A program made the translations under genes and the position numbers. A DNA stretch of 63,376 nucleotides, filler included, from Octopus bimaculoides (lineage: Eukaryota): assembly GCF_001194135.2 (NCBI RefSeq). It is 4 parts of 4 records of this genome, joined end to end, with 100 filler letters (N's around TTAATTAATTAA, not from the genome) between each part and the next. Parts side by side here need not be neighbours in the genome. Positions count along the whole stretch, not along the records: positions 48,444 to 63,376 come from NC_068989.1; 3 more parts are not named here. One strand, 5' to 3'. Of this stretch, positions 8,608 through 63,376 are shown piece after piece. The notes below the pieces were generated by a model. It did not search any database. It was not told where the DNA came from and saw nothing but the letters and a program-made list of their open reading frames with translations. How positions within the stretch are numbered: position 1 is the first letter of the stretch; every line of letters begins with the position of its first letter.

Positions 8608-10366
8608 AACATCCAAATAATTTTTTTCTAGGAAAAGAAGATTCTAAGTATCATTTCCAATTAAACAGATTAAGAAAACAGTTTCTAATTCTTAAATTCT
8701 ACTGAAAAATAAATAGATAAATACAGAAAAGAAATAAACAAGTATCCAACTTATCCAGAAAAATAGGAAGTTGTCTCTGATTATAGTTTAACAAATTGAA
8801 CATCACAACTTTCTTTGTTTTCGCTGTCACATCGTAATTAGCTAATTTGCAACACGAAACCATGTGGTGAGAGAACAGCCGACTGCATCAGTTCCTACAC
8901 TAACAGAGAGGAAATAATCAGCAAGCAGTGACGACTGCACAAACGGTAGCTTTCACAAAAGTCGTTCGACATTCTATAGAGGCTGTCGAAAGTTTAATGC
9001 TAGTCCCTGAGTTATAATATTTTTTCTGAACTAGTCAACCTCCTCAGAGAGCGGGAGAAAAGAAAATACTGAAAACTAAAGTGAAATAACGAATGATTTG
9101 CCTATTTACTCTTAACACGTTCACAGATATGCTGATCGCTCTTATGTTCGTCAGAGAACAGCTTCTCTTTTATGACGACTATGTATTCATAACACACTCA
9201 ATTCGTAACTACGAGAGATACTAAGACACCGATGTTTCGAGATGTTGTGTCTTGTCAGCTGAAGTACTCGGATTGATGAATCTAACAAGAGTTGATGACT
9301 TTCTTTATAATTTCAGCGATCAAACTGATTGCTGCTCAATACTGATAATTAAATGGTAATATGCACGGTGAATAGCGAGTTTCGAAACGATAACTTCCTT
9401 ATTCATATTTAATACATTCCGGCAGATCCGAACACAAATATGTTAATCGTTGTTGTGACCGTCATAGGAGAATAGCTTTTCGTATATGATGAAACTTCAG
9501 GGTGATGAGACTCAGTGAGTCGAAACATCATTTAACATATTTGCTTTCGAATATGCCGGAACGTACTTAAGAGTAAATATGTGATTCATCGTTTCGAATC
9601 TCGCTGTTCACTGTGCATGTAACGATCTATATGAACCGGTAGCAGAGATGGTTTCCTTTTATGGATGGTAAACGCAATCCATCACCTGTTTTCATGCCAT
9701 CACCTATCATTGAGTGGTTATAATGGAGTTCGCTTTGCTGCAGTGACTCGAACTAGTTTTCAAATCTCAGAATAACTTCCTCTCACCAATTAGACAGGCA
9801 CTGAAAAAGTTTTATGGATGCTGCATTTTTGCTTCTTGGATTAAACCATTAATTAAAAAAGTATATGACGTATTATTACTTTATTTTCCGGAACAACACG
9901 GGACATAATTTTGAACATGTTTTGGAACGGTTTCTTACCGTCATCAATGTGAAATCATAGCGGAAGAAATATCATTTCGAAGTAACAGATAAACATGCGC
10001 GTGCCTGTACGCACGTGCGTGTCTGTATATGTATGTATGCGTGTTTGTGTGCGTGCGTGTATCTGTGCGCGCATGTGTGTGTTTAATGTGTGAAGTATTA
10101 AAGAACTATTACAGAATAAACCATATATAGTAAGGAAAAAAGCTGTATCAGTCTATAAATGAGAATGACATATCAGAACTATTTTATTTCTAAACAATTG
10201 TATTTTTCTCTCAACAAATATACTTTTCTCTATATTCATTTAGGGAGTCAATGATTTCGGATTGTAATGATGAAGCTATACTTCACCAATGACGCCTAAA
10301 CAAGCAGAAAACATACGGAGTTTAATCTCGTCTTGAGTCGTGGGGAAAATAAACACTCACTCATAC

Positions 10367-48443: not shown

Positions 48444-48760
48444 TACCTAGCTCAGATACCAGGAAACCCCAAAATGGCTGAAGTTCAAAAGATAGTGCTC
48501 ATGGGAACTGCCCATATCCTACGTAAAATACTGTCTATGTGATCTCAAATTTTAAAGCAAACACATAATTTTCTTATGGTTTCTTAAACATTCACTTGAA
48601 CAAAACTGTACAAATCCAAATATATGGTACCCTAGGCATAACACCTACATGAACTTCTAACTTGTTGTCTCTTGAGGTCTCTGGGTGAGACTTGGATCCA
48701 ACTTGTACAAATGCAAAACAAAAGTCAAACATAAAATAATAATAATATTATTAATAATAA
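48444..48760 (+). mobile_element. R4/Dong-clade LINE 3' end with (TAA)n tail
   Basis: YLAQIPGNPKMAEVQKIVLMGTAHILRKILSM* then a 3' UTR ending AAAATAATAATAAT. Confidence 0.85.
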
Positions 48761-48879
48761 CAATGGTGGTTATAGTAATCGCTATTGTCAGTACATTTTC
48801 CTGTTGTTGACGTACAGATACTGTCGTATCAGTAGCTTTTCTTTCATAGCCAATGTTACATTGAAATTCGACAAGAATG

Positions 48880-49095
48880 ACATGCAAATTATATTTCTAA
48901 ACAATTTAGAAAGATCCCGTGGTAAATACCACGGTAGAGGCTGCTTGTCAATTACATCGACTTCAGTGCACAAATGGTACTTAATTTATCGACCTCGTGT
49001 AGATAAAATGCAAAATCGACCTCGGTGATCTCAGAACGGGCGAAATGTTGCAAAGCAATTTGTCCGCGCGGTAACGATTCTGCCAACTCAATCGA
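48880..49095 (-). mobile_element. SINE family A
   Basis: GTACTTAATTTATCGACC...GCAAAATCGACCTCGG...TAACGATTCTGCCAACTC. Confidence 0.75.
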
Positions 49096-49609
49096 TAGAT
49101 ATTTTGGGACCTTACATGCAAAGAAAAATAAGCTATACATCCCTCTAATCCGGGCGAGTCTCACTCCGTCAGCTCAGATTGAGACACGCACTTCATGTAG
49201 CAAATCAATAAGTTTAGAGTAGCCCACTTTGAGGAGTCTCGCACTGGTTCCGTTAAGGCCAGGTACTTACCCACTAGTCATTTGACAAACAGCTTTGGTT
49301 ATTTTTTTTTCAAACTAGGGACGTTCACTGGCACTTTTTTGACAAGGTGCTGGTCTAAGTGAAGTCGACGTTGGATGAGCTGTTGAGAAGATCGTCTTCG
49401 TGCTCTTGGCAACAGTTTCTTATTTTGTTTGGTTTATCTAGTGACCTTGGCACTTCCTTTAACCACAATTGGATCATAGAGCACTTATGACCATATACAT
49501 TAGATAAAAGATTGTAATAAGTTCTTGAAACACGTGCATCCGCAGCTTTTTGAACTTCAGCTGATCTAGCGTTCCAACATGAGTTTTGTATTTTCCTTAG
49601 ACGCTTTTG

Positions 49610-49781
49610 CAGGGCCGTCTTACCAGCATTATCGGCCCCCTGCTGCATCAATTCACAGGACCTTATAATATCTACTTATTGAGAGAAAACCACAACATAC
49701 ACAGATCAGAATTGGGCCCCTAGACCCGTGAGGCACCCGAGTAACTGCATAGTATGCCCATCTTGTCCTAAGATGGTACTG
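49610..49781. mobile_element. hAT-type MITE (172 bp) inserted in the RTE
   Basis: TIRs CAGGGCCGTCTTA / TAAGATGGTACTG; 8-bp TSD CGCTTTTG (49602-49609) / CGCTTTTC (49782-49789). Confidence 0.8.
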
Positions 49782-50238
49782 CGCTTTTCGACAAGAGCCT
49801 TCATTGCTTTTACCTTCTTCAGAGATCCTGTCTGCACATGGCTAAAGGTGTTATTAAGAAAAGTCTTGTTTACTATTGTTTGTTTCTGCTCTAAAATATT
49901 TTTTATACTTCTTCTTCTTCGGTGTCATCGAAGCAGACTGCATTGTTGCTTTCTTTCTTCACATCCGAGTATTTCAAGTAAAATATTATAGAGTTTAGGT
50001 TTAGAGTCTAACCAAATGTTATTTTGATCTAGCGATGCGAGGATGTTGATTGCTTCCACAATCTGCTTTTGAGTAACACTTTCAAGTTTTAATATATTTC
50101 TACGTTTAGAACGGCAAGTGACTGAATGCCTATATTTGACTTTCAGAATCTTTTCTGTTTTCTGAGATCTTTTATTTTTAAATTGTTTGCATGCCTGTTT
50201 GTTTATGCATTATTTTGTCAGACAGAAAAACTTTTGAG

Positions 50239-51404
50239 TCTTTTCTGCTACTGTTACAGTTTTCGAAATTTTAAAATTAAGTGAAAATTTTGGGTTTATT
50301 GATGTAATTTTTTCACGCTGAATCTGATTTTGTTATTCACTTGTTCTGGAAAAATTTTCGAAAGATATTCACTAAAAATATGTTACTAATTGATTAACCT
50401 CAGGTTACCACACTGGTCAGACTGACCCTAAATGCCACCCTAAACCCTAATTCTAATCCTAAATCTCAACCCTAACCCTAAACCTTTAATCCTAATTCTA
50501 ACCCTAAATCTCAATTCTAAATCCTAACTCTAACAATAACCCTCAACCCAAAACACTAATTCAAATCCTAAACCCCAACTTTGACTCTGACTCTAACCTA
50601 AACCCAAATTCTAACCCTAAACTCCAAACCTAAATCCTAACCCTAAACCCTAATTTTAACTTTAAACCTCAACCCTAAACTCCAACTCTAACTGTAACCC
50701 TAAACTCTAGCTGTAACCATAAACCTCAGTCCTAAACCTTACCTCTAACCTTAACCCCTAGACCTTAGTTTTAATCCTAAATCTCAACCCTAAACTCTAA
50801 CCCTAACTCTGACTCTAAACCCTAATTCCAACCCTAAACATTAACTCTAACCCTAGTGTGTCTCAAACTTTCGTTTTTGAATTTTCACTACAAAAAATGT
50901 ATTAACTGTTTATATGACCTGAACTACAGTAGTATAACGTACAGATTTTTTTGTTTATTTTTGTTTTGGGTTTTGTTTCTTGTAATCTAACGCACACTTT
51001 GTTTTTTGCAATTTTTCGTAAAAAAGAATTTCATTGAAGAGTTTTCGTTTTTATATTGCCTGTTCCAAAGTTTCACATAACTTTATTAATTTAAACTTAT
51101 TAATATTTCAAAACTTATTAAAACTTTCATCATCTTAATATATTTATTTCATTTTGTTTGATAAACGTTTGTCGTCGTAATGTTGTGATAGACAGCTATC
51201 ATGCAGAAAATGCCAGCTTCCAAATCTTGTTTTCTGATTGAGTAAAAATGATCAAATTTTAAATCTCTAATATTTTTCTAAAACTTTTCTGGAACAAGTG
51301 AATAACAAAATCAGATTCAGCGTGGAAAATTCCATCAATATACAAAATTTGAAAATGTTCACTTAATTTTAAAAGTTCGATAACTGTGACAGCAACAGAA
51401 AAGA
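50239..51404. mobile_element. Non-autonomous DNA element with ~130-bp imperfect TIRs, inserted in the RTE
   Basis: 50239-~50370 is the reverse complement of ~51270-51404, including CACGCTGAATCTGATTTTGTTATTCACTTGTTC. Confidence 0.8.
50425..50855. repeat. Degenerate telomere-like (CCCTAA/CCCTAAA/CTCTAA)n array inside the TIR element
   Basis: Dozens of 6-7-nt CCCTAA variants over ~430 bp. Confidence 0.85.
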
Positions 51405-51859
51405 TCCGATTTGATCTTATAAAAAGAAACCTTCACAAGATATTAGTCAGTTTAGCACTTTATGTCTCACATGACCCTCACATCAAAGTGATTTTGTCGA
51501 TCACAGAAACGTGTAATGATCAAGTGTATTAAATACCTATGTCCAAATCATATATATGTGTGTGTCAATGTACGTGCGTAATGCATATTTTGAGATATGA
51601 ATATACATGTATAATCTAAGTATGTGTGTGCGTATGTATATATATATATGTGTGTGTATGTGTATGTATATATAAATATATATATATGTGTATGTGTGTG
51701 CGTATGTACATATATTTATGTTTATATACATATGTGTGTGTGTGTGTGTGTATACATATGTACATATATATATATATATATATAATAATACAAAGAATAT
51801 ATATACATGTATACACACATATATGTACATACTTACATCTACATGTGTATATACATGCA

Positions 51860-52180
51860 TATCAGGGTACAGGACGTTAGAACAATAAACTACAGACAAC
51901 GGAACGAACACATAGGAAAACGGAAAGCACCTTGGAATATCCCTTCATCAGCTGTCTCTATTCTATCTAGACGTTTCGAAGACCAGACAGGACGTACTCT
52001 AGAATAGTCTCTTCCTGAGTAGTGGATCAACCCACTACACAGAGGATTCCAAGGTGGCAAACACAAACCAAGACAGGAAAAAATGGACAGTGAAAACAAC
52101 ATTCAAAAGCCGTACGGCCAAACGCAAATCTGAGGTAGAACGCTAGTAGTTCGTCTTGCCTTCACAGCGATACAGAGAGA
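51860..52180 (-). mobile_element. Penelope-like terminal region with hammerhead-like motifs
   Basis: Minus strand CTA-CTCAGGA-AGAGAC...GTCTTC-GAAACGTC-TAG (52022-51967), then a second CTGATGA at 51951-51945. Confidence 0.45.
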
Positions 52181-52189
52181 GAGGGGGGA

Positions 52190-52530
52190 TTCTTTATTAT
52201 GATAATTTATATCGTATACAGAAAAGGACAGGACAGTACAGGACATAACAAACAAATAGTGCTATGCGAGTTCATATTATAATAACTTTAAAATTTTCCA
52301 CTTTTCACACACAAACTATGGCCGTGAAGTCCAGCGACTACACCTTGCTTCCACCACGAATGAGATTAAGTAGGGACAATCACGCCCAACTTCCTTGCTA
52401 CATCCTTCCATCTTTTCTCGAATACACTTCGCGACAGGTGTCTCTTCTCCAGCCCTATCTTGCTCTTCAGATGATATCTGAAGTAATACAGCAGACCAGG
52501 GCCGGAGATGAAGGATCCTGTCACGAGTCC
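52190..52530 (-). mobile_element. Tx1/L1-clade LINE 3' end (ORF2 last 54 aa + 3' UTR)
   Basis: 52530-52366 GLVTGSFISGPGLLYYFRYHLKSKIGLEKRHLSRSVFEKRWKDVARKLGVIVPT* aligns with the C-terminus of the 58378-58824 ORF. Confidence 0.8.
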
Positions 52531-52545
52531 TTGCATTTTAGACAT

Positions 52546-52576
<31 letters not shown>

Positions 52577-52825
52577 CGTATATGTGCATATACACATGCT
52601 TATATGCATATAGCCATGCGTGCATATATATGAGTGTGTTGTATCAGTAATATATTGTGTTGCTTTTGCGCATAGCTCCACCCCAACAATATTCACTATT
52701 TACTTTTTTTACTTTTTTAATTTGATGCATTAGATGCATTAACCTAACTTGTTATGTATTTATTAAAAGCTTCGTTGTATACTAAATAACTGAGCGTTGA
52801 GTTATCGGCTGAATATCCTATCTAC

Positions 52826-52915
52826 CCAATCAATTAATTTAAGCCAAAAAGATTTTGGCCAATCATAATCGAGGAAAGAATTTATATTTATAGCCTCATT
52901 AAAAGTACTTTATTC
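52826..52915 (+). promoter_or_regulatory. Putative promoter of the 164-aa ORF: two CCAAT boxes 33 bp apart, AT-rich TATA-like element, Inr-like TTATTC
   Basis: CCCAATCA (CCAAT 52826-52830), GGCCAATCA (52859-52863), TATATTTATA 52883-52892, TTATTC 52910-52915. Confidence 0.45.
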
Positions 52916-53103
52916 CGGAAGGCTTTGTTGGGATTGGAAGTCGCTTTCATTAATGTTTTAACCACATTTTTAACTCTTCCAGTACGGTTGATTTGGCAGC
53001 AATCAAAACTAAGAAGAAATAACCAGCCTTCGATATAAACAAAGCAATAAGCTGGTGGATACCGAATTTTCCATTGTATTGCCGACGATAAAGTAATTCT
53101 TTT

Positions 53104-53598
53104 ATGATGGGAGGAATTTTTGCAAGGTTATTTTCCTTTTTTAAATGCCACCGTTCTACAGGCGATTTCTATTTAACAGCCAAACTTCCCCCGAAGCAAA
53201 AGGTGGTCACAACTTTTATGTACACTAAATCCAAGCCTATTAATATTCCTTATAAAATTCCTCACGCACCCCACCTCAAACGTCGAAAAGTCAATTTTCG
53301 ACTGAGCAGCAGTGACTCTGGAGAAAGTAGTAGTCTTTCTTCCCAAAGCTCTGTTAATTGCAAGAAGCGAGTGCTCTACTCGCAATATCGGCGGTTAAGG
53401 GTTGAAACTGAACTAGAAGAGAACGATGGCAAATATAAACGCTTGACTTCTGGCTTGGAAAGGTCTTCCGAAAAGTATTCCAATGAAACTACGACTCACG
53501 AAATTCCTGTAAATCGCATCTCCCGAAAATATAAAACCTATTGTAAGAAAACTGGAGAAGATTGTGATTCTATCGATTGCAAACCACGAAAACCTTGA
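53104..53598 (+). CDS. Intronless hypothetical 164-aa (163 from Met2) basic, Ser-rich, probably disordered protein with linear regulatory motifs
   Basis: Longest non-repeat, non-TE ORF in the window; in-frame TAA at 53089-53091 just upstream; normal complexity; MGGIFARLFSFFK, RKVNF, DSGESS; lies in a SINE- and microsatellite-free island. Confidence 0.55.
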   Translation: MMGGIFARLFSFFKCHRSTGDFYLTAKLPPKQKVVTTFMYTKSKPINIPYKIPHAPHLKRRKVNFRLSSSDSGESSSLSSQSSVNCKKRVLYSQYRRLRVETELEENDGKYKRLTSGLERSSEKYSNETTTHEIPVNRISRKYKTYCKKTGEDCDSIDCKPRKP

Positions 53599-54774
53599 AT
53601 CTCACATTTTAGAGATTTTTTTTTTTCTTTTTTTAGTACTTTTACTTTCCAGTAATGTTGAACTGTTATCAGATTTTTATTGTTTATTGATTGACGTTTG
53701 ATTTTTATCTAGAAATGCATTGTTTGTATATATAATACTATCAAATAATTCTAGTAATCTATATATAACTACTATAGATTGTTGTTTTCTTAAATAACTC
53801 CGTGAAATTCTGCCGACGCTAGTATTTTTTTTTTTATTTTGAGGTCGATGGGAAAATCTCAAATAATCACAAGAAATTAATTTTATGTGAATTTTTTATT
53901 TCTTTTTTTTTTGTAATTTTAAAATCTTTTGACTAAATGTTTTAGTATTCATTTTAAAACGGAGACTTGACCTGCCACGAATAATATTGACTACATTATT
54001 TCTTCTGTTCTAATTGTAGATTTTATTTCTAAACTTTACTCTCAAACATCCACAGTTTATTTTAATGCTAATATTCAATTTTTAAATCGTTGCAGAAGCA
54101 TTTTTTTTTTAATAGAACAAATATTTTCTAGAATTTACTGGGAGATAAATGAGGTTCTTGCTCATTCCTTTTGTTAATTATGAATGCTGCGTTTGCTATT
54201 GTCGAATAGCTGATTCTAATTTGCAAAGATAAATTTTCTGTCTATTTCTTCGCGACTAAAAAATACTTGCAAGCCCTAATTAACTTTTCATATATTTTTA
54301 ATCAACAAAATAATTTCATTCGGATTTTTAACTCCTGAAGTATTTGAATAATTTTAGGTTAGGTCATCTGAGTAAAGCTTCATTTTAGAAATTTCAATTA
54401 TTAAACTGCAAATTTAAGATATGGTTTTACTTACTGGTGAGTACTTCACTACTATGCTCCTAAAACAACATTTTATTGTAGGAAGATTACAATTTGGATA
54501 ACACTAATTCGTTGAGAGTTAATCTTTTAAATTGTCGCGTCGTTTGGATGAAAAAAAGATTTTGACAATCTCTCACTGAAAAATTAAAATCTCAACGGCA
54601 ATCTCTGTTTTGGAAGTCAATTAAATGTTTATTCTCAGGCTTTTCATGACGTTCCAGCTCCAAACTTAACTAACTATATGTATTATTTTTGTTTTTTCTT
54701 AGTTCAATATAGGACAGAAAACAATACCCAAACAACTGAGTTAATATTTCACAACCATATTTCACAATTTTGTC

Positions 54775-55960
54775 TACCTTTCTGAGTTCAAATTCTGCCG
54801 AGGTCGACTTTACCTTTTATGCTTTTGGAGTCGATAAAAGATGCACTAGTTAAACACTGGGGTTAATGTAATCGACTAACCCCTTCTCTCAAATTTCAGG
54901 CCTTGTATCTATAGTAGAAAGGATTATTATATAGGATGTTCTCTGGAATAAATAATTATATTTAAATATAACATTTCCAGAAAGTTCCAAACTTCTCTAC
55001 ATTTTTTGCCTGTTTTTGTCTCCAGTAAACTGCTTAGAGGTTCCGTATCGTATCTAGAACAGAGTTGGGAGAAAGGCACAAAATATTGTTCACGAAATAT
55101 GAACTCCTGAATCTCTATCTTGTGCACTGAGTTTCAAAATATTTATAATAGTTTTAACATTGGCATTAATGTCTTCTAGAGTTTTTCTAAAGCTTAATGG
55201 ATGATAAAAACTACATCGAACCTTCGCCAGTTTATCCTGCATTTAAAAAAATCAGGCTGCGTGTCTAATGTATAAAGTAATTATATCTACATGATCAGGA
55301 ATCTAAGCAAAAAGTGGAGAAATTTGATTAAGACGAAGGCAGCGAAATGATTGAATCGTTGGCGCGCGAACAAAATAGTACTTAGCGGCATTCTTTCCGA
55401 CATTTTACGCTTATAGTTCAAATTCTGCTAAGATCCACTTTACCTATTATCTTTCGGGATTGGTAAAATAAATACCAGTTTAACATTAAAGTAGATGTAA
55501 TCGACTTATCCCCACCAGATCCTTAAATTTGCCGGCCTTGTGCTGAAATTAGAAGGCTGGTAAAATCGTTAGATCATCGAGCAAAATATTTAGCGGCATT
55601 TCTTCCGACTCTGTATGCTACCAGGTCAACTTTGCCTTTCATCCTTTCAGAGCCGATAAAATAAAGTACCAGTCAAGTACTGTAGATAATGTAATCGACT
55701 TTCCCCCTCCCCTCAAATTGCGGGCTTATGCCAAAATTAGAAGTATTATTATTATAGCGGTGGATTAACAAAATCGTTGGAGAGTCAGAAAAAATGCCTT
55801 GTGGTATTTGTTGTCTCTTTATATTCTGAGTTCAACTTCTGCCGCGGTTGACTTTGCCTTTCATCCTTTCAAGATCAATAAAATAAATCCTACTGGGATC
55901 GCTGTAATCAATCTCCACTCGTCCCATCAGAATTGCTAGCTTTGTGCCATAATTAGAACC
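54775..55960 (+). mobile_element. Cluster of 4 co-oriented SINE family A copies, last three head-to-tail
   Basis: Cores at ~54780, 55410, 55620, 55825. Confidence 0.8.
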
Positions 55961-57818
55961 ATATAAATTTACCGCGAGCCCTCTCTAAACCGGTAGTGCA
56001 TCAGACAAATGCCTGGCGCTGTTTAGTTACGTCCCTTTTACATACGTTAAAACCCTTCACTCTGGGTTGACTTTTACAGTTCATCATTAAAAGCGGGTAG
56101 ATGTTAAGATACACCCGCTATCGAACGGATTTCGTTTAATCAACAATTCGTTGTACCAAGACTTGTAATCTTGTGCTTAAATCAGATTATTTTTTTCTCG
56201 TTATCATCAAATAAGTGTACCGTGCGGCAAGAGAAATTCTTGTATAAATAATGTTAACTATTGTCCTATTAATGGATTCTGTCATTTGACCGTGGCCATG
56301 CTGGAGCATTTTTAATCGCTAGGTAGTTATTTCTCGTTCTCGTAAAATACGAAATACCAAGTGAGTTCAAATTTCTCTAAGGCCACTTTGCCTATTAGCA
56401 TCAAAGCGAATTATTCAGTCTGACATAGAGACTGCAAGATATTTGTATTTGAACGTCACATGCGTTTTACCCTTCTGGCCCAGGCTGCTGTACAATGGAA
56501 GAAAAACCCGGAACCACACAGTCACGAAGCGAACTTGTTAAAACCATGCATCCATTCCAACGCCCAGGATATTTCGAATATTTCCAGAATTTTATAACTG
56601 AATGATTTTTTAAGATATTATGCAGAGTTCATTCACCTCTCAAGGATATCAACACCATAATTGAATTAATTTCGCTTCATGCTGGAATTGGGACCCTTAA
56701 CGCACTTGTGAAAAATACAAGAACTGCCATAAGCATTACTATTTTTTTTCTTGCAAAAGGATTACAAGTTTTGTTCCTGCTAAGTCAAAAGAACTTAATA
56801 TTTGTATAGTGTTCACAGCTGAGAAAGACGTGAGCCTCCAACTACCCAAACAGCGATGTCTGGTTTTAATTTGGGCTGCAAATCTGTCACTTTACTCAAA
56901 CTATTAATATTTCGTTTCTGCATAAAGCCATTCCACTTTTTAATGCAATCGTATGTATTGTTTGTGTTATCTCATTATTTCTCTGGACAAGGGGAAATCC
57001 AAAATTGAATAAAACCTGCAGTTGACTTGTGTTGAACAGTTCCGCATTTGCCAAAAGCGATTTTACCATTATGCCCTCTGGTATTTGTAATGATGCCAAA
57101 TTCAACAAAAATTCTAAGATAATTCTACTCGCACGTTCTATTTTTACTCGGAACACTTTGAGAAAATGTTGTTATTGATTGTACTTTCATATCTGACGTT
57201 GGTGGATCATTCTCTTCTAGCCTTTCTTTCCAAAATCGTATGCAAGAGGATTCTTTTGAAACATCTACAGGAACGATGACCATGATGAAATTTCTTCAAT
57301 TTGTTACCCATATATATTCCAAAGCAATCCCATATTCCCAAACTGTTAATGATGCTGGGAAAGCTAATCACTGCAGACCAGCAAACCAGTTCTTCTCACT
57401 TAAAGTATAGAACTTTGTATTTTTAGTCAAACGTATTAGTCTTCCATTAATCCTATTATGCTTGAGGTGGGGTGCCCTTTGAGTCCTCCACTCGTGAGGG
57501 TTTTTTTTTTTTTTGGAGGGGGATGCAAGGATGCAGATTTGGTATAATCTTGAACAAAATCTTTCAAACGAAATTCAGTCAACGGAAACCAGCAGGAAGC
57601 ATCCATCCTTGTGTTGAGTGATAGACTTAATGTGTCCTTTCCTTCGACACCGCCATCTACAACTTGAGTGCTTTTAGCTGAGTCTGCCCCGTTGCAAGTA
57701 TTTTGACCGTATCTCTGGTCTGAGTAAACTTCAACCTTCCACTAACGAATCAGGGGAAGCCCTAAAAGAAGCTATACGATGCTGCCCTTTGACTAAACAG
57801 TACAAAAGGTGGTAATGA

Positions 57819-57851
<33 letters not shown>

Positions 57852-57854
57852 ATC

Positions 57855-57888
<34 letters not shown>

Positions 57889-57925
57889 ATTTTCTCTTTC
57901 TCTCATTTTCTCTTTCTCTCTCTTC
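57819..57925. repeat. (TC)n/(TCTATC)n microsatellite
   Basis: Direct reading. Confidence 0.95.
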
Positions 57926-58019
57926 CTCGCTGTTGACTCCAGATAATACTTGGAACTTTCTTGAAGGACTTCTGAGGTGAAAGAAGACCGTAATGCTGAA
58001 TTAAACAAGTTGCAGTATT

Positions 58020-58150
58020 TATTACCTCCACATTCGCTAAGGCGAAGGTATTATTTTTAGTCGTGTTTGTTTATTATTTGTTTGTCCTTGGACAAGATAT
58101 CTCAAGAAACGCTGGATGGATTCGGATGAAACTTTCAGGGATGTTTGGCT
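58020..58150 (+). mobile_element. Helentron/DINE-1-like element, 5' part, truncated at the Tx1 3' end
   Basis: ATTACCTCC, hairpin TTCGC-TAAG-GCGAA, AACGCTGGATGGATTCGGATGAAACTTTCAGGGATGTTTG shared with 28337. Confidence 0.7.
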
Positions 58151-58154
58151 TTAT

Positions 58155-58850
58155 TATTGCCCATACAGGCGCACAAAGAGGGGGGACAACACAATATGAA
58201 CGGGGTCATATATAACTGTATGATTTTTAAAATTTACAATAACAGATGATTAACGAATGGAACACAAAAAACATTTACATGTACAAAAATAACACAATGA
58301 GGCATTAAAAACAGGTAAGCTCTAATCCCACGAGCCCTGTCTTTAATACCGACACCTTGGTCATCTTTCTGACGTGTTCACGCAGGGCCTTTCACTCCCA
58401 ACATACGTGCCACACGCGTCCATCGTTTATTGAACGCACACACTGACAGACACCCCCTTTCCAGCCCCACCTTCCTTTTAAGGTGAAAGGTAAAAACATT
58501 CACCAGAGCGAGGCCGGCGACGAAGCTGTCTGTCACAATCCCTTCCATCATTGACTTCCATATCACCTCTCTCGCAATTGCTACTACTACGAGAAAACAA
58601 TTCTTACCTTCTTCCGTAAGGAAATCCAGCGGATTAATTTTTAGAATTGACTCAGGTGATAGTTGTACTCTTCTTTCATCTGACAACAGGTGTTCTACAT
58701 AAACCCACACTTCTGAAATTCCCGGACACTGAACAATAGTGTGCAGGACGGTTTCCACCTCCCGCTCACATCTTGGACAGGCCGACGGCCCACGATGGCT
58801 GTTCATAACAAAGGTCACAAACACAGCCCTTTCATCCTGACTAAACTGTT
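58155..58850 (-). mobile_element. Tx1/L1-clade LINE 3' fragment with CCHC zinc finger
   Basis: ORF 58378-58824: CPRCEREVETVLHTIVQC...VW...AREVIWK...FNKRW; 3' UTR ends ...AATAATAAAG. Confidence 0.85.
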
Positions 58851-59335
58851 TAAAATAAATTAATTATAAGTTCATGACAGATTTTAGTATTAATGATACT
58901 TGACATCGTAAGCTACTAAATCGACACAAATGAATAACAGATCAACTCATGAGATTTGAACCAAGATTTTTTTTTTTTTTTTGCTTGTCATGTGACAGAT
59001 ATACAGGGATAAAGAGGAAATTAATAAGTGTGAGCTTAAATGAAATCGAACCAATGACCCATTTGTTAACGCCTCTATGTATTTATCTGTGCACTACAAA
59101 ATCCCTAGCAGATTTAGTATAGCCGAATGGTTAAGTTCGCCTTGCATCCACGAGAACTTGGGTTCGATCTTACTGCATAGCATCTTGGTTTACTGTCATT
59201 TTTCGATAACTTCGAGTTGACCCATACCTTGTGAGTAAAACTAGATTGACGAAAGTTGTATAGAAGCGTAGCAAGTAGATTTTTTATCTGCCACACATAC
59301 TGTATCCCCTTGACCCAGCCTGAAAACTATCTTAA

Positions 59336-59986
59336 CCCTTTGAGCCCTGACCTCCTGACCCTTATTTGACCATATACCTGACTTCCTGAGCAAAATAAGC
59401 AGAAAATTGGGTTAGTCTCAATTACAGAGAAGCCTACCTGACCCCTAGTGCCAATATTCCACCTTGGTATACCAATCGGTCCAGCAAATTGATCCCCTTT
59501 TGATGCAGATGAACCTTGCATTCTTGGCAACAGACGGTTGATTTGACTGCTTTGACCGGATAATCCTTGTAAGGAACACTGGGATTTCACATACAACACA
59601 CAGTATTTGTAGACCAATCCTCTGCAATGTGTGGATGGTGGCGGCCTACGTTTTGCAGACGAACAGGGACTTCTCGATTACGAGCTCTACGAACAGCTTT
59701 TGTGCGAAACTCACCGACTAGTCCCACACTGTACTGATCCAGAAATGTGTGGAATGTGTACTTTTTGGCCTTCTCAGGATTGTAGATAACCCTCATAAGA
59801 AATTTCACGAAAAGCCTTCTTGGCCAGCGATAATGGCGTCTTGTCTTATAAAGTTTCGACATTTGATCGTCGGATAAAAATAAATCGCCGTACTTTAGTG
59901 CAGATGCACTCCACCGGTAGAGCGGTGCTACGGTATAGAGAAAAATAAGCCATCCACTGGTAAACCGGTGTTACGGGCTCAAAGGG
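59336..59986 (-). mobile_element. Internally deleted piggyBac (651 bp) retaining the transposase C-terminal Cys-rich domain
   Basis: TTAA (59332-59335) + CCCTTTGAGCCC ... GGGCTCAAAGGG + TTAA (59987-59990); frameshifted RLQNVGRHHP...CVVC...ARFICIKRGSICWTDWYTKVEYW. Confidence 0.9.
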
Positions 59987-60194
59987 TTAAGGGTATACGT
60001 GTCTGTGGAATACTCAGCCACTTGTTAATTCAAGGGCGGATAATTCAGTTGATCGTATAACTGAACTCTCATGGTGTGAGAATTTTGATTGAGATCCATT
60101 TATAAACTCCCTAACAATTCTAGCTGTCAAGTTACACACGGATATTGACTGAGAAAATCTGTGAATATTTTATTGGTGGAAGTTCCAGGAAAAT

Positions 60195-60506
60195 TGTTGT
60201 TGTTGTTTGTTTTTTCTCGAGCCATGCCTGGCTCATAAGGGCCGGTTTCCAAGTTTCATTGGTGTATAAGTTCCCCACCTGGACGGGATGCCGGTCCATC
60301 GCTGGTGAGCTGCTAGATGCAGGAGGAAAGAGTGAGAGAAAGTTGTGGCGAAAGGGTCAGCAGAAGTTCGCCATTACCTTCTGCCGGAGCCGCGTGGAGC
60401 TTAGGTGTTTCACTCATAAACACACGTATCGCCTGGTCTGAGATTCGAACCCGCGATCCCTCGAACGCGAGCCCGCTGCTCTAACCACTAGGCCATGTGC
60501 CTCCAC
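60195..60506 (-). mobile_element. tRNA-derived SINE family C, young CpG-rich copy with (CAA)n tail
   Basis: A box TGGCCTAGTGG, B box GGTTCGAATCT, central GCGATGGACCGGCATCCCGTCCAGG, tail GGCTCGAGAAAAAACAAACAACAAC. Confidence 0.85.
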
Positions 60507-60509
60507 AAG

Positions 60510-60670
60510 GAAAATTGCTTAGCAGCATTTCGTCCGTCTTTCTGTTCTGTGTTCAAATTCCGCCGCGATCGACTTTGCCTTTCATCCTGTTGAGGTCGAT
60601 AAAAGAAGTACCATTTAAACACTAGGGTTGATCTAATCGACTTAACCCTTCCTCCGAAATTGCTGAATAT
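60510..60670 (+). mobile_element. SINE family A, 5'-truncated
   Basis: GTTCAAATTCCGCCGCGATCGACTTTGCCTTTCATCC...CCGAAATTGCTG. Confidence 0.8.
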
Positions 60671-61880
60671 TAAATTGGATGAGTTGCTAAATTTCTTTCA
60701 ACCACTTGAAGTTCTGTAACTTTTCACCAGATTATTATTTTTTTTTTTTTAACGTAGTTCAAATGTAGATTTGTATTTTTCCTAAAAATTGCATGCATTA
60801 ATAACACACATTCCCAGCGTTATGTTTATGATTGGATATAATAAACATATTTAGAATCGCTATGAATTTAGGGCAATATTAACGATGCATTGGTGCTCTA
60901 AATAAGAACGAAAACCATCAATACCGCCAATTATGTTATATCATGTGTTGTCGTTTCTGTTTTTCAGACGCTATGGTGTAATCTAATGAAGGGTTGCCTG
61001 CTATTTCTGGCAGGCCTAGATATCACATACAGGTTTCTTCTTTGTCGTCTTATCTTTGTCTTCACTGATTTCCATGATATCAGAATACGCCGGCCTACGC
61101 TATGTTGGCAATGGACGCTTTCGATTGGCTAAAATTACATAACTTTGTGTAACTTTTATTTTATTATTAATTTCTAGAAGAAAAGGTGTGCGATTTTCGT
61201 CAGCAGCAGAACCACACCAGACCTACATTTTTAAAAAATAACTTTATGAAAATTTGTGACCTTCCAGTAACTGGAAGAAATTTAACAAGATCTGTGAGGG
61301 TGAAGTGAGGACTATATACATTAATAACTGCTACGTCTTTTATTCCTGACTACTTTTCAAGTTACGATGGAGCAGTGATACACTGCGTTTGTAATTCTGC
61401 ACCAACTTTCACAGAANNNNNNNNNNNNNNNNNNNNNNNNNNNNNNNNNNNNNNNNNNNNNNNNNNNNNNNNNNNNNNNNNNNNNNNNNNNNNNNNNNNN
61501 NNNNNNNNNNNNNNNNNNNNNNNNNNNNNNNNNNNNNNNNNNNNNNNNNNNNNNNNNNNNNNNNNNNNNNNNNNNNNNNNNNNNNNNNNNNNNNNNNNNN
61601 NNNNNNNNNNNNNNNNNNNNNNNNNNNNNNNNNNNNNNNNNNNNNNNNNNNNNNNNNNNNNNNNNNNNNNNNNNNNNNNNNNNNNNNNNNNNNNNNNNNN
61701 NNNNNNNNNNNNNNNNNNNNNNNNNNNNNNNNNNNNNNNNNNNNNNNNNNNNNNNNNNNNNNNNNNNNNNNNNNNNNNNNNNNNNNNNNNNNNNNNNNNN
61801 NNNNNNNNNNNNNNNNNNNNNNNNNNNNNNNNNNNNNNNNNNNNNNNNNNNNNNNNNNNNNNNNNNNNNNNNNNNNNNNT

Positions 61881-62155
61881 TTGGTAGACGGAAACTGAAG
61901 GAAGTCCGTCGTATATATGTGTATATATATATGTATGTGTGTGTATATGTTTGTGTGTCTGTGTTTGTCCCCCCCCCCACCATCGCTTGACAACCGATGC
62001 TGGTGTGTTTACGTCCCCGTAACTTAGCGGTTCGGCAAAAGAGACCGATAGAATAAGTACTAGGCTTACAAAGAATAAGCCCTGGGGTCGATTTGCTCGA
62101 CTAAAGTCGGTGCTCCAGCATAGCCGCAGTCAAATGACTGAAACAAGTAAAGAGT
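61881..62155 (+). mobile_element. SINE family B (middle + tail), young; head lost in gap 61397-61880
   Basis: TTGGTAGACGGAAACTGAAGGAAGTCCGTCG-(TA/TG)n-...GCCGCAGTCAAATGACTGAAACAAGTAAAGAG. Confidence 0.9.
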
Positions 62156-62584
62156 ACTGATCTTATTGGCCCTCTTTCACCAAGTCACTAAGTTACGGGG
62201 ACGTAAAGAAACCAACACTGGATGTTAAGCGGGGGGAGGGGCGATATATGTATAATTCCACGCTGTTTCCGTCTAACTTATTCACTCGTAAGGCATAGAT
62301 TATAGTAGAAGGCACTTGCTAACAGTGCCGCACAGTGGAACCCGAAACCACGCCGTTGCAAAGCCTGCATCTTATCCATATTTTGTTATCCTATCCCATC
62401 CAGTATGTGTCTCTTATGTGAACGAGTATTCTATACAAAAATATAAAAGAAAACATTAAAAATTCAAGGCGGGATCCCAGCATGACCGTAGTCTAATGAC
62501 TGCAACAAATAAAAGAGAAAAATCAAATTATATTACAGTCGTGGATATAAGTATGGAAGATAGATGTGAAAATTGGAATTTTTA

Positions 62585-62800
62585 CATTCTTTTCTACTCT
62601 AGGAACAAGGCCCGAAATTTTGGGGGAGGCAGTCGATTAGATCGACTCCAGTACGCAACTGGTACTTGCTTTATCGACCTAGAAAGGATGAAAGGCAAAG
62701 TCGACTTCGGCAGAATTTTAAACTCAGAACATAAGGACAGATGAAGTACCGCTAATCATTTCGCCTGGCGTGCTAACGATTCTGCCAGCTCGCCGACTTC
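62585..62800 (-). mobile_element. SINE family A
   Basis: GGCCCGAAATTTT...GAAAGGATGAAAGGCAAAGTCGAC...TTCTGCCAGCTCGCCG. Confidence 0.85.
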
Positions 62801-62899
62801 GAATTTTTTATATTAAATCCCCAGTTATATTTAATTTGCAATATACTACTACATGTCCAATAGTTTGGAACATAGGTGATAAAGTTTATCTTGAACATA

Positions 62900-63110
62900 T
62901 CTTTTATCTTTTACTTGTTTCGGTCATTTGACTGCGGCCATGCTGGGACAACGCCTTGAAGGGATTTAGTCGAACAACTCAACTCAAGGACTTTATTTAA
63001 GCCTAGTGCTTATTCTGCCGGTCTTTTACCGAACCGCTAAGCTAAGGGGACGTAAACACACCAACACCGGTTGTCAAGTAGTGGTGAGGGAACACACACA
63101 CACAAACACA
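62900..63110 (-). mobile_element. SINE family B 3' half
   Basis: TTTTACTTGTTTCGGTCATTTGACTGCGGCCATGCTGG...GGTTGTCAAG. Confidence 0.85.
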
Positions 63111-63192
63111 CATACATACATAGGAATACAAAATACAAAATGGCTGACAGTTAGCAAGGTGAGACACACATAAGAAAGAAGAAAGCAAAGGA

Positions 63193-63232
63193 CCACTGAT
63201 GAGGTCACAGAAGTGTGACGAAAGAACTCTGG
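63193..63232 (+). ncRNA. Minimal type I hammerhead ribozyme candidate
   Basis: CCA-CTGATGA-G-GTCAC(AGAAGT)GTGAC-GAAA-GAAC-TC-TGG; core nucleotides intact, stem III minimal. Confidence 0.5.
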
Positions 63233-63376
63233 CCGAAATAGGATTAATGTAATATAATGTAATATAATATAAAGCTGAAGCAAATTAACACCAAATATAC
63301 AGTGCGTGTGTTTTTATTGGCTAAACTGGCAATATGACCATCCCCAAGTACAACAACATATATATATATATATATA

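What the first reader, a model, noticed from the sequence alone, without database searches (positions are those of the whole stretch)
53104..53598. Orphan intronless gene candidate combining a membrane anchor, PP1 docking site and phosphodegron
Seen: a 164-codon ORF of normal complexity, with no TE motif I recognise, in a ~2-kb island (52650-54770) free of the SINEs and microsatellites that fill the rest of the window. From Met2 the N-terminus MGGIFARLFSFFK closely parallels the myristoylated amphipathic helix of ARF1 (MGNIFANLFKGLF), but no GTPase domain follows. It also has RKVNF (53284-53298, fits the PP1 RVxF consensus), DSGESS (53314-53331, fits the beta-TrCP DSGxxS degron) and KRVLY (53365-53379, fits cyclin-docking RxL). 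Established: these motif classes mark short-lived phosphatase and cell-cycle regulators such as PPP1R15 and Emi/Cdc25-type proteins. Inference: a small, possibly lineage-specific, membrane-tethered, degradation-controlled PP1 adaptor. Short motifs arise by chance, so only conservation can settle this.
Basis: partly seen in the sequence, partly recalled or inferred. Interest (0 to 1): 0.75.

Follow-up and report, generated by a model that had tools for sequence, protein, structure and literature searches.

The report
Octopus-only orphan gene, function unknown
The 164-codon reading frame is a real, single-exon protein-coding gene found so far only in octopuses and the argonaut, but the "phosphatase-docking plus degron" story built on its short motifs mostly fails the conservation test, so it is an uncharacterised lineage-restricted gene and not a recognisable PP1 regulator.

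Summary
The ORF is a real gene. Only this frame is open in four octopod taxa: the window, Octopus vulgaris, an unnamed octopod from SRA reads, and Argonauta hians. It has no frame-breaking indels where about 9 are expected. dN/dS is 0.18-0.47 in the C-terminal block. Against Argonauta, synonymous sites are saturated (pS 0.84-0.98) while pN is 0.25-0.28. A 54-nt upstream block (palindrome, CCAAT box, TATA-like box) is identical in three octopodids. It is the longest identical run in the island, and the CCAAT-TATA layout recurs in Argonauta.

No relative was found outside Octopoda in 5.8 billion proteins or 1.84 billion cluster representatives. Pfam, NCBIfam and PDB gave nothing, and AlphaFold gave no fold.

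The motifs fare badly:
- **DSGxxS:** a window-lineage novelty (ancestral DSEE).
- **RxL:** expected by chance (73%) and not conserved.
- **RVxF:** kept in three octopodids, absent in Argonauta, 19% chance.
- **Gly2:** invariant. The ARF-like amphipathic pattern is not.

The constrained parts are PINIPYKIP and the block SQ[YF]RR[LF]RVE..GKY..L.SGLER.SE..EIP.N.

Best reading: a small, basic, disordered, probably N-myristoylated orphan protein acting through that block. Transcription is unproven.

The parts
52837..52890 (+). Putative core promoter. This 54-nt block is identical in the window, O. vulgaris and the unnamed octopod. It contains the palindrome GCCAAAA-AGA-TTTTGGC (52843-52859), a CCAAT box (52859-52863, GGCCAATCA) and a TATA-like TTATATTTATA (52882-52892). 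The inferred transcription start is about 52910-52925.
   Evidence: this is the longest three-way identical run in the 2.2-kb island, twice the longest run inside the CDS. CCAAT lies at -248 and the TATA-like box at -225 from the ATG. Argonauta has CCAATCA at -280 and TTATATATAA at -261, although its sequence is otherwise unalignable. Promoter function is inferred, not shown.
53089..53091 (+). In-frame TAA upstream of the start codon, conserved in the three octopodids. The ORF therefore cannot extend 5' without splicing.
   Evidence: 6 codons upstream of the second ATG in all three; alignment.
53104..53598 (+). Single-exon coding sequence of 164 codons plus TGA. The likely initiation codon is the second ATG at 53107 (A at -3, G at +4), giving MGGIF... 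with Gly at position 2.
   Evidence: The O. vulgaris annotation (CAI9728350.1) also starts at the second ATG, and Argonauta has a single ATG in the context ATAATGG.
53107..53145 (+). N-terminal segment MGGIFARLFSFFK. Gly2 is invariant in 4 of 4 taxa and the first 12 residues are hydrophobic. It is a candidate N-myristoylation site.
   Evidence: The PROSITE PS00008-type pattern is met in 3 of 4 (Argonauta has Phe after Gly). Amphipathicity is not significant.
53236..53262 (+). PINIPYKIP (residues 45-53). It is invariant in the three octopodids, and SKPI.I is recognisable in Argonauta (SKPISI).
   Evidence: 9 of 9 invariant.
53284..53298 (+). RKVNF. It matches the RVxF consensus, sits inside a basic patch (KRRKV) and is followed by a Ser/acidic cluster.
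   Evidence: RKVNF/RKVNF/KRVCF in octopodids. EMSF in Argonauta. Chance expectation is 19%.
53305..53331 (+). Ser/acidic cluster SSSDSGESS (CK2-type S..[DE] sites). It includes the window-only DSGESS.
   Evidence: SSSDS is invariant in octopodids and there is a Ser-rich stretch in Argonauta. The G is derived on the window branch.
53365..53532 (+). Conserved C-terminal block, residues 88-143: [KR].V[LF].SQ[YF]RR[LF]RVE...E..GKY..L.SGLER.SE...EIP.N. This is the most constrained part of the protein and the only part with strong identity to Argonauta.
   Evidence: 41 of 51 invariant in octopodids; omega 0.18-0.47; profile hit to Argonauta at E=8.4e-10 falls in this block; Argonauta versus Octopus pS 0.84-0.98, pN 0.25-0.28.
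53599..54640 (+). Putative 3' UTR or downstream conserved DNA. It has patches of three-way identity and two conserved ATTAAA hexamers (54400-54405 and 54620-54625).
   Evidence: The transcript end is inferred only. No transcript was available.

Best explanation
This is a genuine, single-exon, Octopoda-restricted orphan gene driven by a conserved CCAAT/TATA-type promoter. It encodes a small (163-164 aa), strongly basic, Ser/Thr-rich protein that is probably intrinsically disordered.

Shown: the frame is maintained by selection across octopods, with uneven constraint. The N-terminal two-thirds drifts quickly. Gly2, PINIPYKIP and a roughly 55-residue C-terminal block are held.

Inferred: translation starts at the second ATG. 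The exposed Gly2 is N-myristoylated, which tethers the protein weakly to membranes. The conserved C-terminal block is the partner-binding module. The Ser/acidic cluster next to a basic patch is a phosphorylation-regulated segment, so the protein would act as a lipid-anchored linear-motif adaptor, in the manner of BASP1 or MARCKS, and not as an enzyme.

A PP1-docking RVxF may have been added in the Octopodidae lineage, but it is not a family-wide feature. The DSGxxS and RxL matches are incidental.
For: - **Gene reality:** only frame +1 is open in all four taxa. There is one 3-nt indel and no frame-breaking one, against 8.7 and 4.4 expected. Stop-free survival after 99 random substitutions has P=0.015. 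NG86 omega is 0.37-0.72 overall and 0.18-0.47 in the C block. Against Argonauta, the C block has pS 0.84-0.98 and pN 0.25-0.28.
- **Structure of the gene:** it is single exon in O. vulgaris and A. hians annotations made by different pipelines.
- **Promoter:** a 54-nt invariant block with a CCAAT box and a TATA-like box, and the same layout in Argonauta.
- **Orphan status:** nothing outside Octopoda in three word-index searches, even at E<=10, and one exhaustive HMMER scan. Pfam, NCBIfam and PDB gave nothing.
- **Disorder:** AF2 mean pLDDT was 33.5 and 45.3, with no confidently modelled element in either run.
- **Composition:** K+R 34 against D+E 16, and S+T 33 of 164.
- **Gly2 and start codon:** Gly2 is invariant, and the second ATG has a strong context.
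Against: - No transcript, ribosome-profiling or peptide evidence could be obtained. The exact window protein is not in the protein or contig collection, and the octopod SRA contigs are genomic because they end in a microsatellite and a SINE.
- The O. vulgaris protein cluster has a single member, so no other annotation in the collection contributed a protein at 90% identity or more.
- Codon-position differences against the unnamed octopod are nearly flat (0.18/0.21/0.22), so most of the protein is only weakly constrained.
- Argonauta has Phe after Gly2, which fails the PROSITE myristoylation pattern, and its N-terminus is not amphipathic.
- Low pLDDT may only reflect the 3-4 sequence alignment.
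- The mechanism (myristoyl anchor, C-block as binding module) is inference from sequence alone.
Confidence: 0.55

Rival explanations
1. One reading: a membrane-tethered, beta-TrCP-degraded, cyclin-docked PP1 adaptor. RVxF recruits PP1, DSGxxS gives phospho-dependent turnover, and RxL gives cell-cycle coupling.
For: An RVxF match with typical basic N-flank and acidic/Ser C-flank is retained in three octopodids (RKVNF, RKVNF, KRVCF). Gly2 is invariant. A different and better-conserved SG motif, (T/E)SGLER(S/C)SE, lies in the C block and could in principle be a non-canonical phosphodegron.
Against: DSGxxS is present only in the window, through a derived E>G change. RxL is lost in two of four taxa and is expected by chance in 73% of shuffles. 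RVxF is absent from the Argonauta protein and expected in 19% of shuffles. I saw no SILK, MyPhoNE or hydrophobic-pair accessory motif in the sequence. There is no similarity to any PP1-regulator family in Pfam or the PDB.
Confidence: 0.1
2. Not a functional protein gene: a chance ORF inside a conserved non-coding element or lncRNA, or a gene now decaying in the Octopus lineage.
For: No expression evidence was obtained. Between the window and O. vulgaris the ORF diverges faster (88.9% identity) than every other part of the 15-kb piece (92-94%). Codon positions are almost equally diverged against the unnamed octopod. The best-conserved DNA is upstream of the ORF, not in it.
Against: An open frame of 164-204 codons is kept in four taxa, including Argonauta, where flanking DNA is unalignable and synonymous sites are saturated while pN in the C block is 0.25-0.28. 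Frame-breaking indels are absent (P=1.6e-4) and stops are absent (P=0.015). Omega is below 1 in every comparison. Rfam gave no hit.
Confidence: 0.12
3. Fast-evolving lineage-specific gene in an evolutionary conflict or reproductive role. The protein is real, but its excess divergence reflects positive selection, gene conversion from an unseen paralogue, or a locally raised mutation rate, and not adaptor housekeeping.
For: The ORF has 55 mismatches against 34.9 expected after correcting for base composition. Third positions are 16% diverged against 6.8% for surrounding DNA (P=4e-5). A/T sites change 2.3 times faster inside the ORF than outside. Both the window and O. vulgaris branches are accelerated. 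CpG decay does not explain it. The gene is intronless, an orphan, and carries a TATA-type promoter.
Against: Omega never exceeds 1. The excess includes synonymous sites, which selection on the protein cannot explain. No paralogue was found within 10 kb either side or among annotated proteins. Counts are small (13 and 7 synonymous changes).
Confidence: 0.15
4. Transposable-element or virus-derived ORF.
For: It is intronless and surrounded by SINE-like copies. A reverse-transcriptase zinc-finger remnant lies 5 kb away.
Against: It is single copy in the piece and in each 20-kb orthologous locus. Only three homologous protein clusters exist in 5.8 billion proteins. There is no TE or viral domain; the Pfam hits are only chance-level (E=0.36-0.76). 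No terminal repeats bracket it. The position is orthologous, with colinear flanks, in three taxa.
Confidence: 0.03

Closest known systems
BASP1 / MARCKS / GAP-43 type N-acylated, basic, intrinsically disordered membrane-associated proteins (from established knowledge; no homology)
   Same: Small protein starting MGG..., with invariant Gly2, basic patches next to phosphorylatable serines, no predicted fold, and the coding sequence in one exon.
   Different: No detectable sequence relationship. The polybasic patch is not conserved in Argonauta. Lipidation is untested. The conserved C-terminal block has no counterpart in those proteins. This is a 'works like' comparison only.
RVxF-type PP1-interacting proteins (for example inhibitor-1, PPP1R15, spinophilin)
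   Same: A consensus RVxF with a basic N-flank and an acidic/Ser C-flank in three octopodids, in a disordered context as in most PP1 regulators.
   Different: The motif is absent in the Argonauta orthologue. Accessory motifs are absent. There is no homology to any PP1-regulator family. The motif has a 19% chance expectation.
ARF/ARL small GTPases (N-terminal myristoylated amphipathic helix)
   Same: MGGIFARLFSF and MGGTITTLFSC resemble ARF1 and ARF4 N-termini over about 10 residues (ARF sequences from memory), and the Gly2 position matches.
   Different: No GTPase domain follows, and no Arf Pfam hit appears even at E<=10. The amphipathic moment is not significant and is not conserved. The similarity is too short to test for common descent.
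Taxonomically restricted ('orphan') genes of cephalopod genomes
   Same: Restricted to one order, short, intronless, disordered, fast evolving, and annotated only as 'hypothetical protein'.
   Different: Unlike many orphan calls, this one has cross-family conservation (Octopodidae plus Argonautidae), measurable purifying selection, and a strongly conserved promoter block.

Membership tests
Protein-coding gene under selection | Reading frame kept open across species, against the indel and stop expectations from flanking DNA | tested here: met
   no frame-breaking indels (8.7 expected, P=1.6e-4); P(no stop)=0.015; only frame +1 is open in 4 of 4 taxa.
Protein-coding gene under selection | dN/dS below 1 | tested here: met
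   omega 0.37-0.72 overall and 0.18-0.47 in the C block; against Argonauta, pS 0.84-0.98 and pN 0.25-0.28 in the C block.
Protein-coding gene under selection | Transcribed and translated | not testable with these tools
   No transcriptome was accessible. The SRA contigs are genomic. The window protein is absent from the collection.
RVxF-type PP1-interacting protein | [RK]-x(0,1)-[VI]-{P}-[FW] conserved in orthologues | tested here: inconclusive
   Present in 3 octopodids, absent in Argonauta (EMSF, no match elsewhere). 19% of shuffles carry a match.
RVxF-type PP1-interacting protein | Accessory docking motifs (SILK, MyPhoNE, hydrophobic pair and Arg after RVxF), or homology to a known regulator family | tested here: not met
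   I saw none when reading the sequence. There is no Pfam or PDB relative.
RVxF-type PP1-interacting protein | Physical binding to the PP1 catalytic subunit | not testable with these tools
   Needs a pull-down or ITC with V63A/F65A controls.
beta-TrCP substrate (DSGxxS phosphodegron) | DSG(x)2-3[ST] conserved in orthologues | tested here: not met
   Window only. The others have DSEENS or DSEDDG. The G is derived on the window branch.
Cyclin-docking RxL protein | [RK]xL motif conserved at the same position | tested here: not met
   KRVLY, KRVLY, RRVFF, KNVLL. 73% of shuffles carry a match.
N-myristoylated protein | Gly at position 2 after the initiator Met | tested here: met
   Invariant in 4 of 4 if the second ATG (strong Kozak context) is used.
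N-myristoylated protein | NMT substrate pattern G-{EDRKHPFYW}-x(2)-[STAGCN]-{P} | tested here: inconclusive
   Met in 3 of 4. Argonauta GFVLSK has Phe at the excluded position, though it has favourable Ser6 and Lys7.
N-myristoylated protein | Covalent myristate on the protein | not testable with these tools
   Needs metabolic labelling or mass spectrometry.
ARF/ARL GTPase | Small-GTPase domain (P-loop, switch regions) after the N-terminal helix | tested here: not met
   No Arf or Ras Pfam hit at E<=10, and no PDB GTPase hit.
Transposable element | Multiple dispersed copies, terminal repeats, or TE protein domains | tested here: not met
   family size of 4. No curated TE library was available, so this is not an exhaustive test.

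The most novel reading that the evidence does not exclude
An Octopoda-specific regulatory protein born de novo or diverged beyond recognition. Its lipid-anchored, disordered body acquired a working PP1-docking RVxF only in Octopodidae. Its coding sequence is subject to a local process that drives substitutions, including synonymous ones, at about twice the neutral rate while the frame and a 55-residue module are preserved. That process could be gene conversion, transcription-linked mutagenesis, or recurrent selection. If so, this would be a tractable example of motif gain wiring an orphan gene into a conserved phosphatase network.
Probability: 0.1. Interest if true: 0.55.

Novelty: new member of a known kind. 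Interest (0 to 1): 0.3.

Why it matters
Cephalopod genomes hold many lineage-restricted genes whose reality is doubtful. This one can be shown from sequence alone to be maintained by selection across Octopodidae and Argonautidae. It also has a sharply conserved promoter, which makes it a credible target for expression mapping and knock-down.

It is also a cautionary case. Three textbook linear motifs in one small ORF looked like a coherent mechanism, yet two of them disappear once orthologues are aligned. The truly constrained residues were not the ones pattern-matching picked out.

If the residual PP1-docking possibility or the raised substitution rate proved real, the gene would be of moderate interest for orphan-gene evolution. 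As it stands, it is an uncharacterised hypothetical protein.

Tried and rejected
- **Domain and structure libraries:** Pfam, NCBIfam and PDB sequence searches on all four proteins and the profile gave only chance-level hits: IMUP E=0.76, Pap_E4 E=0.36, 2ipq E=0.58.
- **AlphaFold2:** runs with 3- and 4-sequence alignments gave pLDDT 33.5 and 45.3. The models are unusable, so I ran no fold search.
- **Exhaustive profile scan:** besides Argonauta, the only hit was a bacterial repeat protein (P0005, E=1.3e-4). I judged it spurious from its sequence.
- **ARF-like amphipathic helix:** the hydrophobic moment does not differ from shuffles (0.24-0.94 of shuffles reach it) and is lost in Argonauta.
- **CpG decay as the cause of excess ORF divergence:** rejected. 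CpG o/e is 1.0-1.2 and only 2 of 28 changes are in CpG context. Base composition explains only part of the excess (34.9 expected, 55 observed).
- **SRA contigs as transcripts:** rejected. They are colinear with the genome and end in a microsatellite and a SINE. Two runs differ at two positions, apart from one extra terminal base, so this is resequencing of one species.
- **Synteny with Argonauta within 10 kb either side:** only the ORF and SINE-like repeats are shared. The CLAMP-domain neighbour in Argonauta has no counterpart in the piece.
- **Non-coding RNA:** no Rfam family in the piece.
- **Literature:** searches for the run and protein accessions found nothing.
- **Exact look-up of the window protein:** the 163- and 164-aa forms are not on record.
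- **Signal peptide or neuropeptide-precursor reading:** rejected by eye. A charged residue interrupts the short N-terminal hydrophobic run in all taxa. No predictor was available.

Full report
**1. The observation**

The piece 48444-63376 contains a 164-codon ORF at 53104-53598 on the + strand, running from ATG to TGA.

| Motif | Coordinates | Residues |
|---|---|---|
| RKVNF | 53284-53298 | 61-65 |
| DSGESS | 53314-53331 | 71-76 |
| KRVLY | 53365-53379 | 88-92 |

The N-terminus reads MMGGIFARLFSFFK. The ORF sits in a roughly 2-kb stretch free of the SINE-like family and the microsatellites found on both sides. SINE-like copies lie at 54780-54886, 55415, 55607, 55787, 60508, 62631 and 48947. 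An in-frame TAA at 53089-53091 closes the frame upstream. The second ATG (53107) has A at -3 and G at +4, so MGGIF... is the likelier product.

**2. Relatives**

A search of 5.8 billion proteins found only two relatives:
- An Octopus vulgaris 'hypothetical predicted protein' (CAI9728350.1, 164 aa, 82% identity).
- A 165-aa protein at 61% identity, from Logan assemblies of runs SRR11869391 and SRR11869394. The species is not given.

An exhaustive HMMER profile scan of 1.84 billion cluster representatives added one more. This is Argonauta hians Ahia01_000635400 (204 aa, E=8.4e-10). It aligns over its whole length, with 40% identity to the window protein. The scan also returned a bacterial repeat protein, which I regard as spurious. 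Repeating the word-index search with the four-sequence profile, even at E<=10, gave nothing further. Pfam, NCBIfam and PDB sequence searches gave only chance-level matches. The family as visible here is confined to Octopoda.

**3. Is it a gene?**

The O. vulgaris locus (L002) is colinear with the window over the whole piece, at 92-94% substitution-only identity. The unnamed octopod contig (L001) is colinear with 52626-54690 at 75% identity. It ends in a microsatellite and a SINE, so it is genomic DNA and not a transcript. The two SRA runs differ at two positions, apart from one extra terminal base.

The evidence for coding:
- **Indels.** Within the ORF there is a single indel, 3 nt long. Flanks predict 8.7 frame-breaking indels against L001 (P of none = 1.6e-4) and 4.4 indels against O. 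vulgaris (P of no frame-breaking one = 0.016).
- **Stops.** Random placement of the 99 observed substitutions leaves the frame stop-free in 1.5% of trials.
- **Frames.** Only frame +1 is open in all four taxa.
- **dN/dS.** Nei-Gojobori omega is 0.37, 0.57 and 0.72 for the three octopodid pairs. It is 0.18-0.47 in alignment columns 101-150.
- **Argonauta.** Synonymous sites are saturated (pS 0.78-0.98), while pN is 0.25-0.28 in residues 88-137 and 0.42-0.47 in the N-terminal part.
- **Annotation.** The gene is a single exon in the O. vulgaris and A. hians annotations, which were made by different pipelines combining ab initio, transcript and homology evidence.

I conclude that the ORF is a protein-coding gene under uneven purifying selection.

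**4. Promoter**

The longest run identical in the three octopodids across the 2.2-kb island is not in the CDS. It is at 52837-52890 (54 nt), against 28 nt for the best run inside the CDS. It contains:
- The palindrome GCCAAAA-AGA-TTTTGGC (52843-52859). From general knowledge, its arms are NFI-type half sites.
- A CCAAT box in the NF-Y-like context GGCCAATCA (52859-52863).
- TTATATTTATA (52882-52892).

CCAAT and the TATA-like box lie at -248 and -225 from the ATG. Argonauta has CCAATCA at -280 and TTATATATAA at -261, although its upstream DNA is otherwise unalignable. This is the layout of a Pol II core promoter, with a start site about 25-35 nt after the TATA-like box. That is an inference, since no transcript was available. 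Two ATTAAA hexamers (54400, 54620) are conserved in the three octopodids.

**5. The motifs under conservation**

| Feature | Other octopodids | Argonauta | Chance in shuffles | Verdict |
|---|---|---|---|---|
| DSGESS | DSEENS, DSEDDG | no counterpart | 0.4% | Window only; G arose by E>G on the window branch |
| KRVLY (RxL) | KRVLY, RRVFF | KNVLL | 73% | Not conserved |
| RKVNF (RVxF) | RKVNF, KRVCF | EMSF, no match elsewhere | 19% | Octopodids only |
| Gly2 | invariant | invariant | - | Conserved |

Taken together, 6 of 16 motif residues are invariant in octopodids, against 92 of 165 columns overall.

The PROSITE-type myristoylation pattern holds in 3 of 4 taxa. The ARF-like amphipathic character is not statistically distinguishable from shuffles and is absent in Argonauta. 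No GTPase domain follows.

The parts that are constrained are:
- PINIPYKIP, 9 of 9 invariant, with SKPISI in Argonauta.
- The SSSDS serine cluster.
- Residues 88-143, [KR].V[LF].SQ[YF]RR[LF]RVE...E..GKY..L.SGLER.SE...EIP.N, with 41 of 51 invariant across residues 93-143.

The block contains a conserved (T/E)SGLER(S/C)SE.

**6. What the protein is like**

It is basic (K+R 34 against D+E 16) and rich in Ser/Thr (33 of 164). AlphaFold2 gave no confident element in either run (mean pLDDT 33.5 and 45.3). This is consistent with disorder, but it is also what a 3-4 sequence alignment would give.

The most economical reading is a small disordered protein with three working parts:
- An N-terminal Gly2 lipid anchor (inferred).
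- A phosphorylatable Ser/acidic segment beside a basic patch (inferred).
- The conserved C-terminal block as the module that binds partners (inferred from constraint).

This is how BASP1 and MARCKS-type proteins work, but there is no homology to them. PP1 docking remains possible for Octopodidae only.

**7. An unexplained feature**

Between the window and O. vulgaris, the ORF is the most diverged part of the piece. Its identity is 88.9% overall and 86.0% in 53329-53578, against 92-94% elsewhere, SINE-filled DNA included (Fisher P=0.001).
- Third codon positions differ at 16%, against a background of 6.8% (P=4e-5).
- dS is 0.255, and 0.37 in the amino-acid-conserved block.
- Both sister branches are accelerated.
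- CpG decay is not the cause.
- Base composition accounts for only 34.9 of the 55 mismatches, and A/T sites change 2.3 times faster inside the ORF than outside.

Gene conversion from an unseen paralogue, transcription-associated mutagenesis, and sampling noise on small counts all remain open.

**8. Rivals**

- **Chance ORF or lncRNA.** Contradicted by the frame, indel and dN/dS evidence, but it cannot be fully excluded without expression data.
- **Transposable-element or viral origin.** Contradicted by single-copy orthologous placement, a family of four, and the absence of TE domains or terminal repeats.
It fails on two of three motifs.

**9. Verdict**

The gene is real and orphan, restricted to octopods. 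It is already present in databases as a 'hypothetical protein' in two genomes. It appears unannotated in the window's species, because the exact protein is not in the collection. The attractive mechanism proposed from motifs is mostly not supported. Interest is modest. The useful outputs are a defined conserved module, a defined promoter block, and a short list of tests.

The species of the window is not given. From its roughly 93% identity to O. vulgaris in neutral DNA, I infer a congener or near relative.

Noticed in passing
window 53104-53598 versus L002 10001-10495: The ORF diverges about twice as fast as surrounding neutral DNA between the window species and O. vulgaris, at synonymous sites as well (third positions 16% against 6.8%). 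No frame-breaking change has accumulated. CpG decay does not explain it, and base composition explains it only partly.
   Followed up: partly
window 52837-52890: A 54-nt block identical in three octopodids, the longest such run in the island. It holds the palindrome GCCAAAA-AGA-TTTTGGC, a CCAAT box and a TATA-like box. The CCAAT-TATA layout also occurs upstream of the Argonauta gene (L003 about 9720-9750).
   Followed up: partly
window 50239-51404: A degenerate telomere-like (CCCTAA)n array (50437-50855) is bracketed by inverted repeats of about 130 nt (50239-50369 and 51269-51404, 89-90% complementary). The whole unit is also present at the orthologous place in O. vulgaris (L002 3110-4508). 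It may be a TIR-bounded element carrying an interstitial telomeric repeat.
   Followed up: no
window 58378-58824 (-): A 148-aa ORF with a weak match to the reverse-transcriptase zinc-binding domain (PF13966, E=3e-4, below the cut-off). It is probably a non-LTR retrotransposon remnant, and it is shared with O. vulgaris at about 90% identity.
   Followed up: partly
window 54780-54886, 55415-55468, 55607-55660, 55787-55886, 60508-60651, 62631-62721 (inverted), 48947-49025: At least seven copies of one SINE-like family (core ...GTTCAAATTCTGCCG.GGTCGACTTTGCCTTTCATCC...). The same family ends the SRA contig L001 and recurs in the O. vulgaris and Argonauta loci.
   Followed up: partly
window 61417-61879: An assembly gap (run of N) flanked by TG/TA microsatellite. 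ORFs listed across it are artefacts.
   Followed up: yes
L003 15681-20615 (-): In Argonauta hians the nearest called neighbour of the orthologue is a CLAMP-domain (PF14769) gene about 5 kb downstream on the opposite strand. No counterpart is visible in the window piece or within 10 kb either side in O. vulgaris.
   Followed up: partly
L001 versus L004 (SRR11869391 and SRR11869394): Two resequencing runs of an unnamed octopod give the same 2.2-kb contig with two single-base differences. One is non-synonymous in the ORF (Ser/Thr at residue 80). The species could not be identified from the tools.
   Followed up: partly
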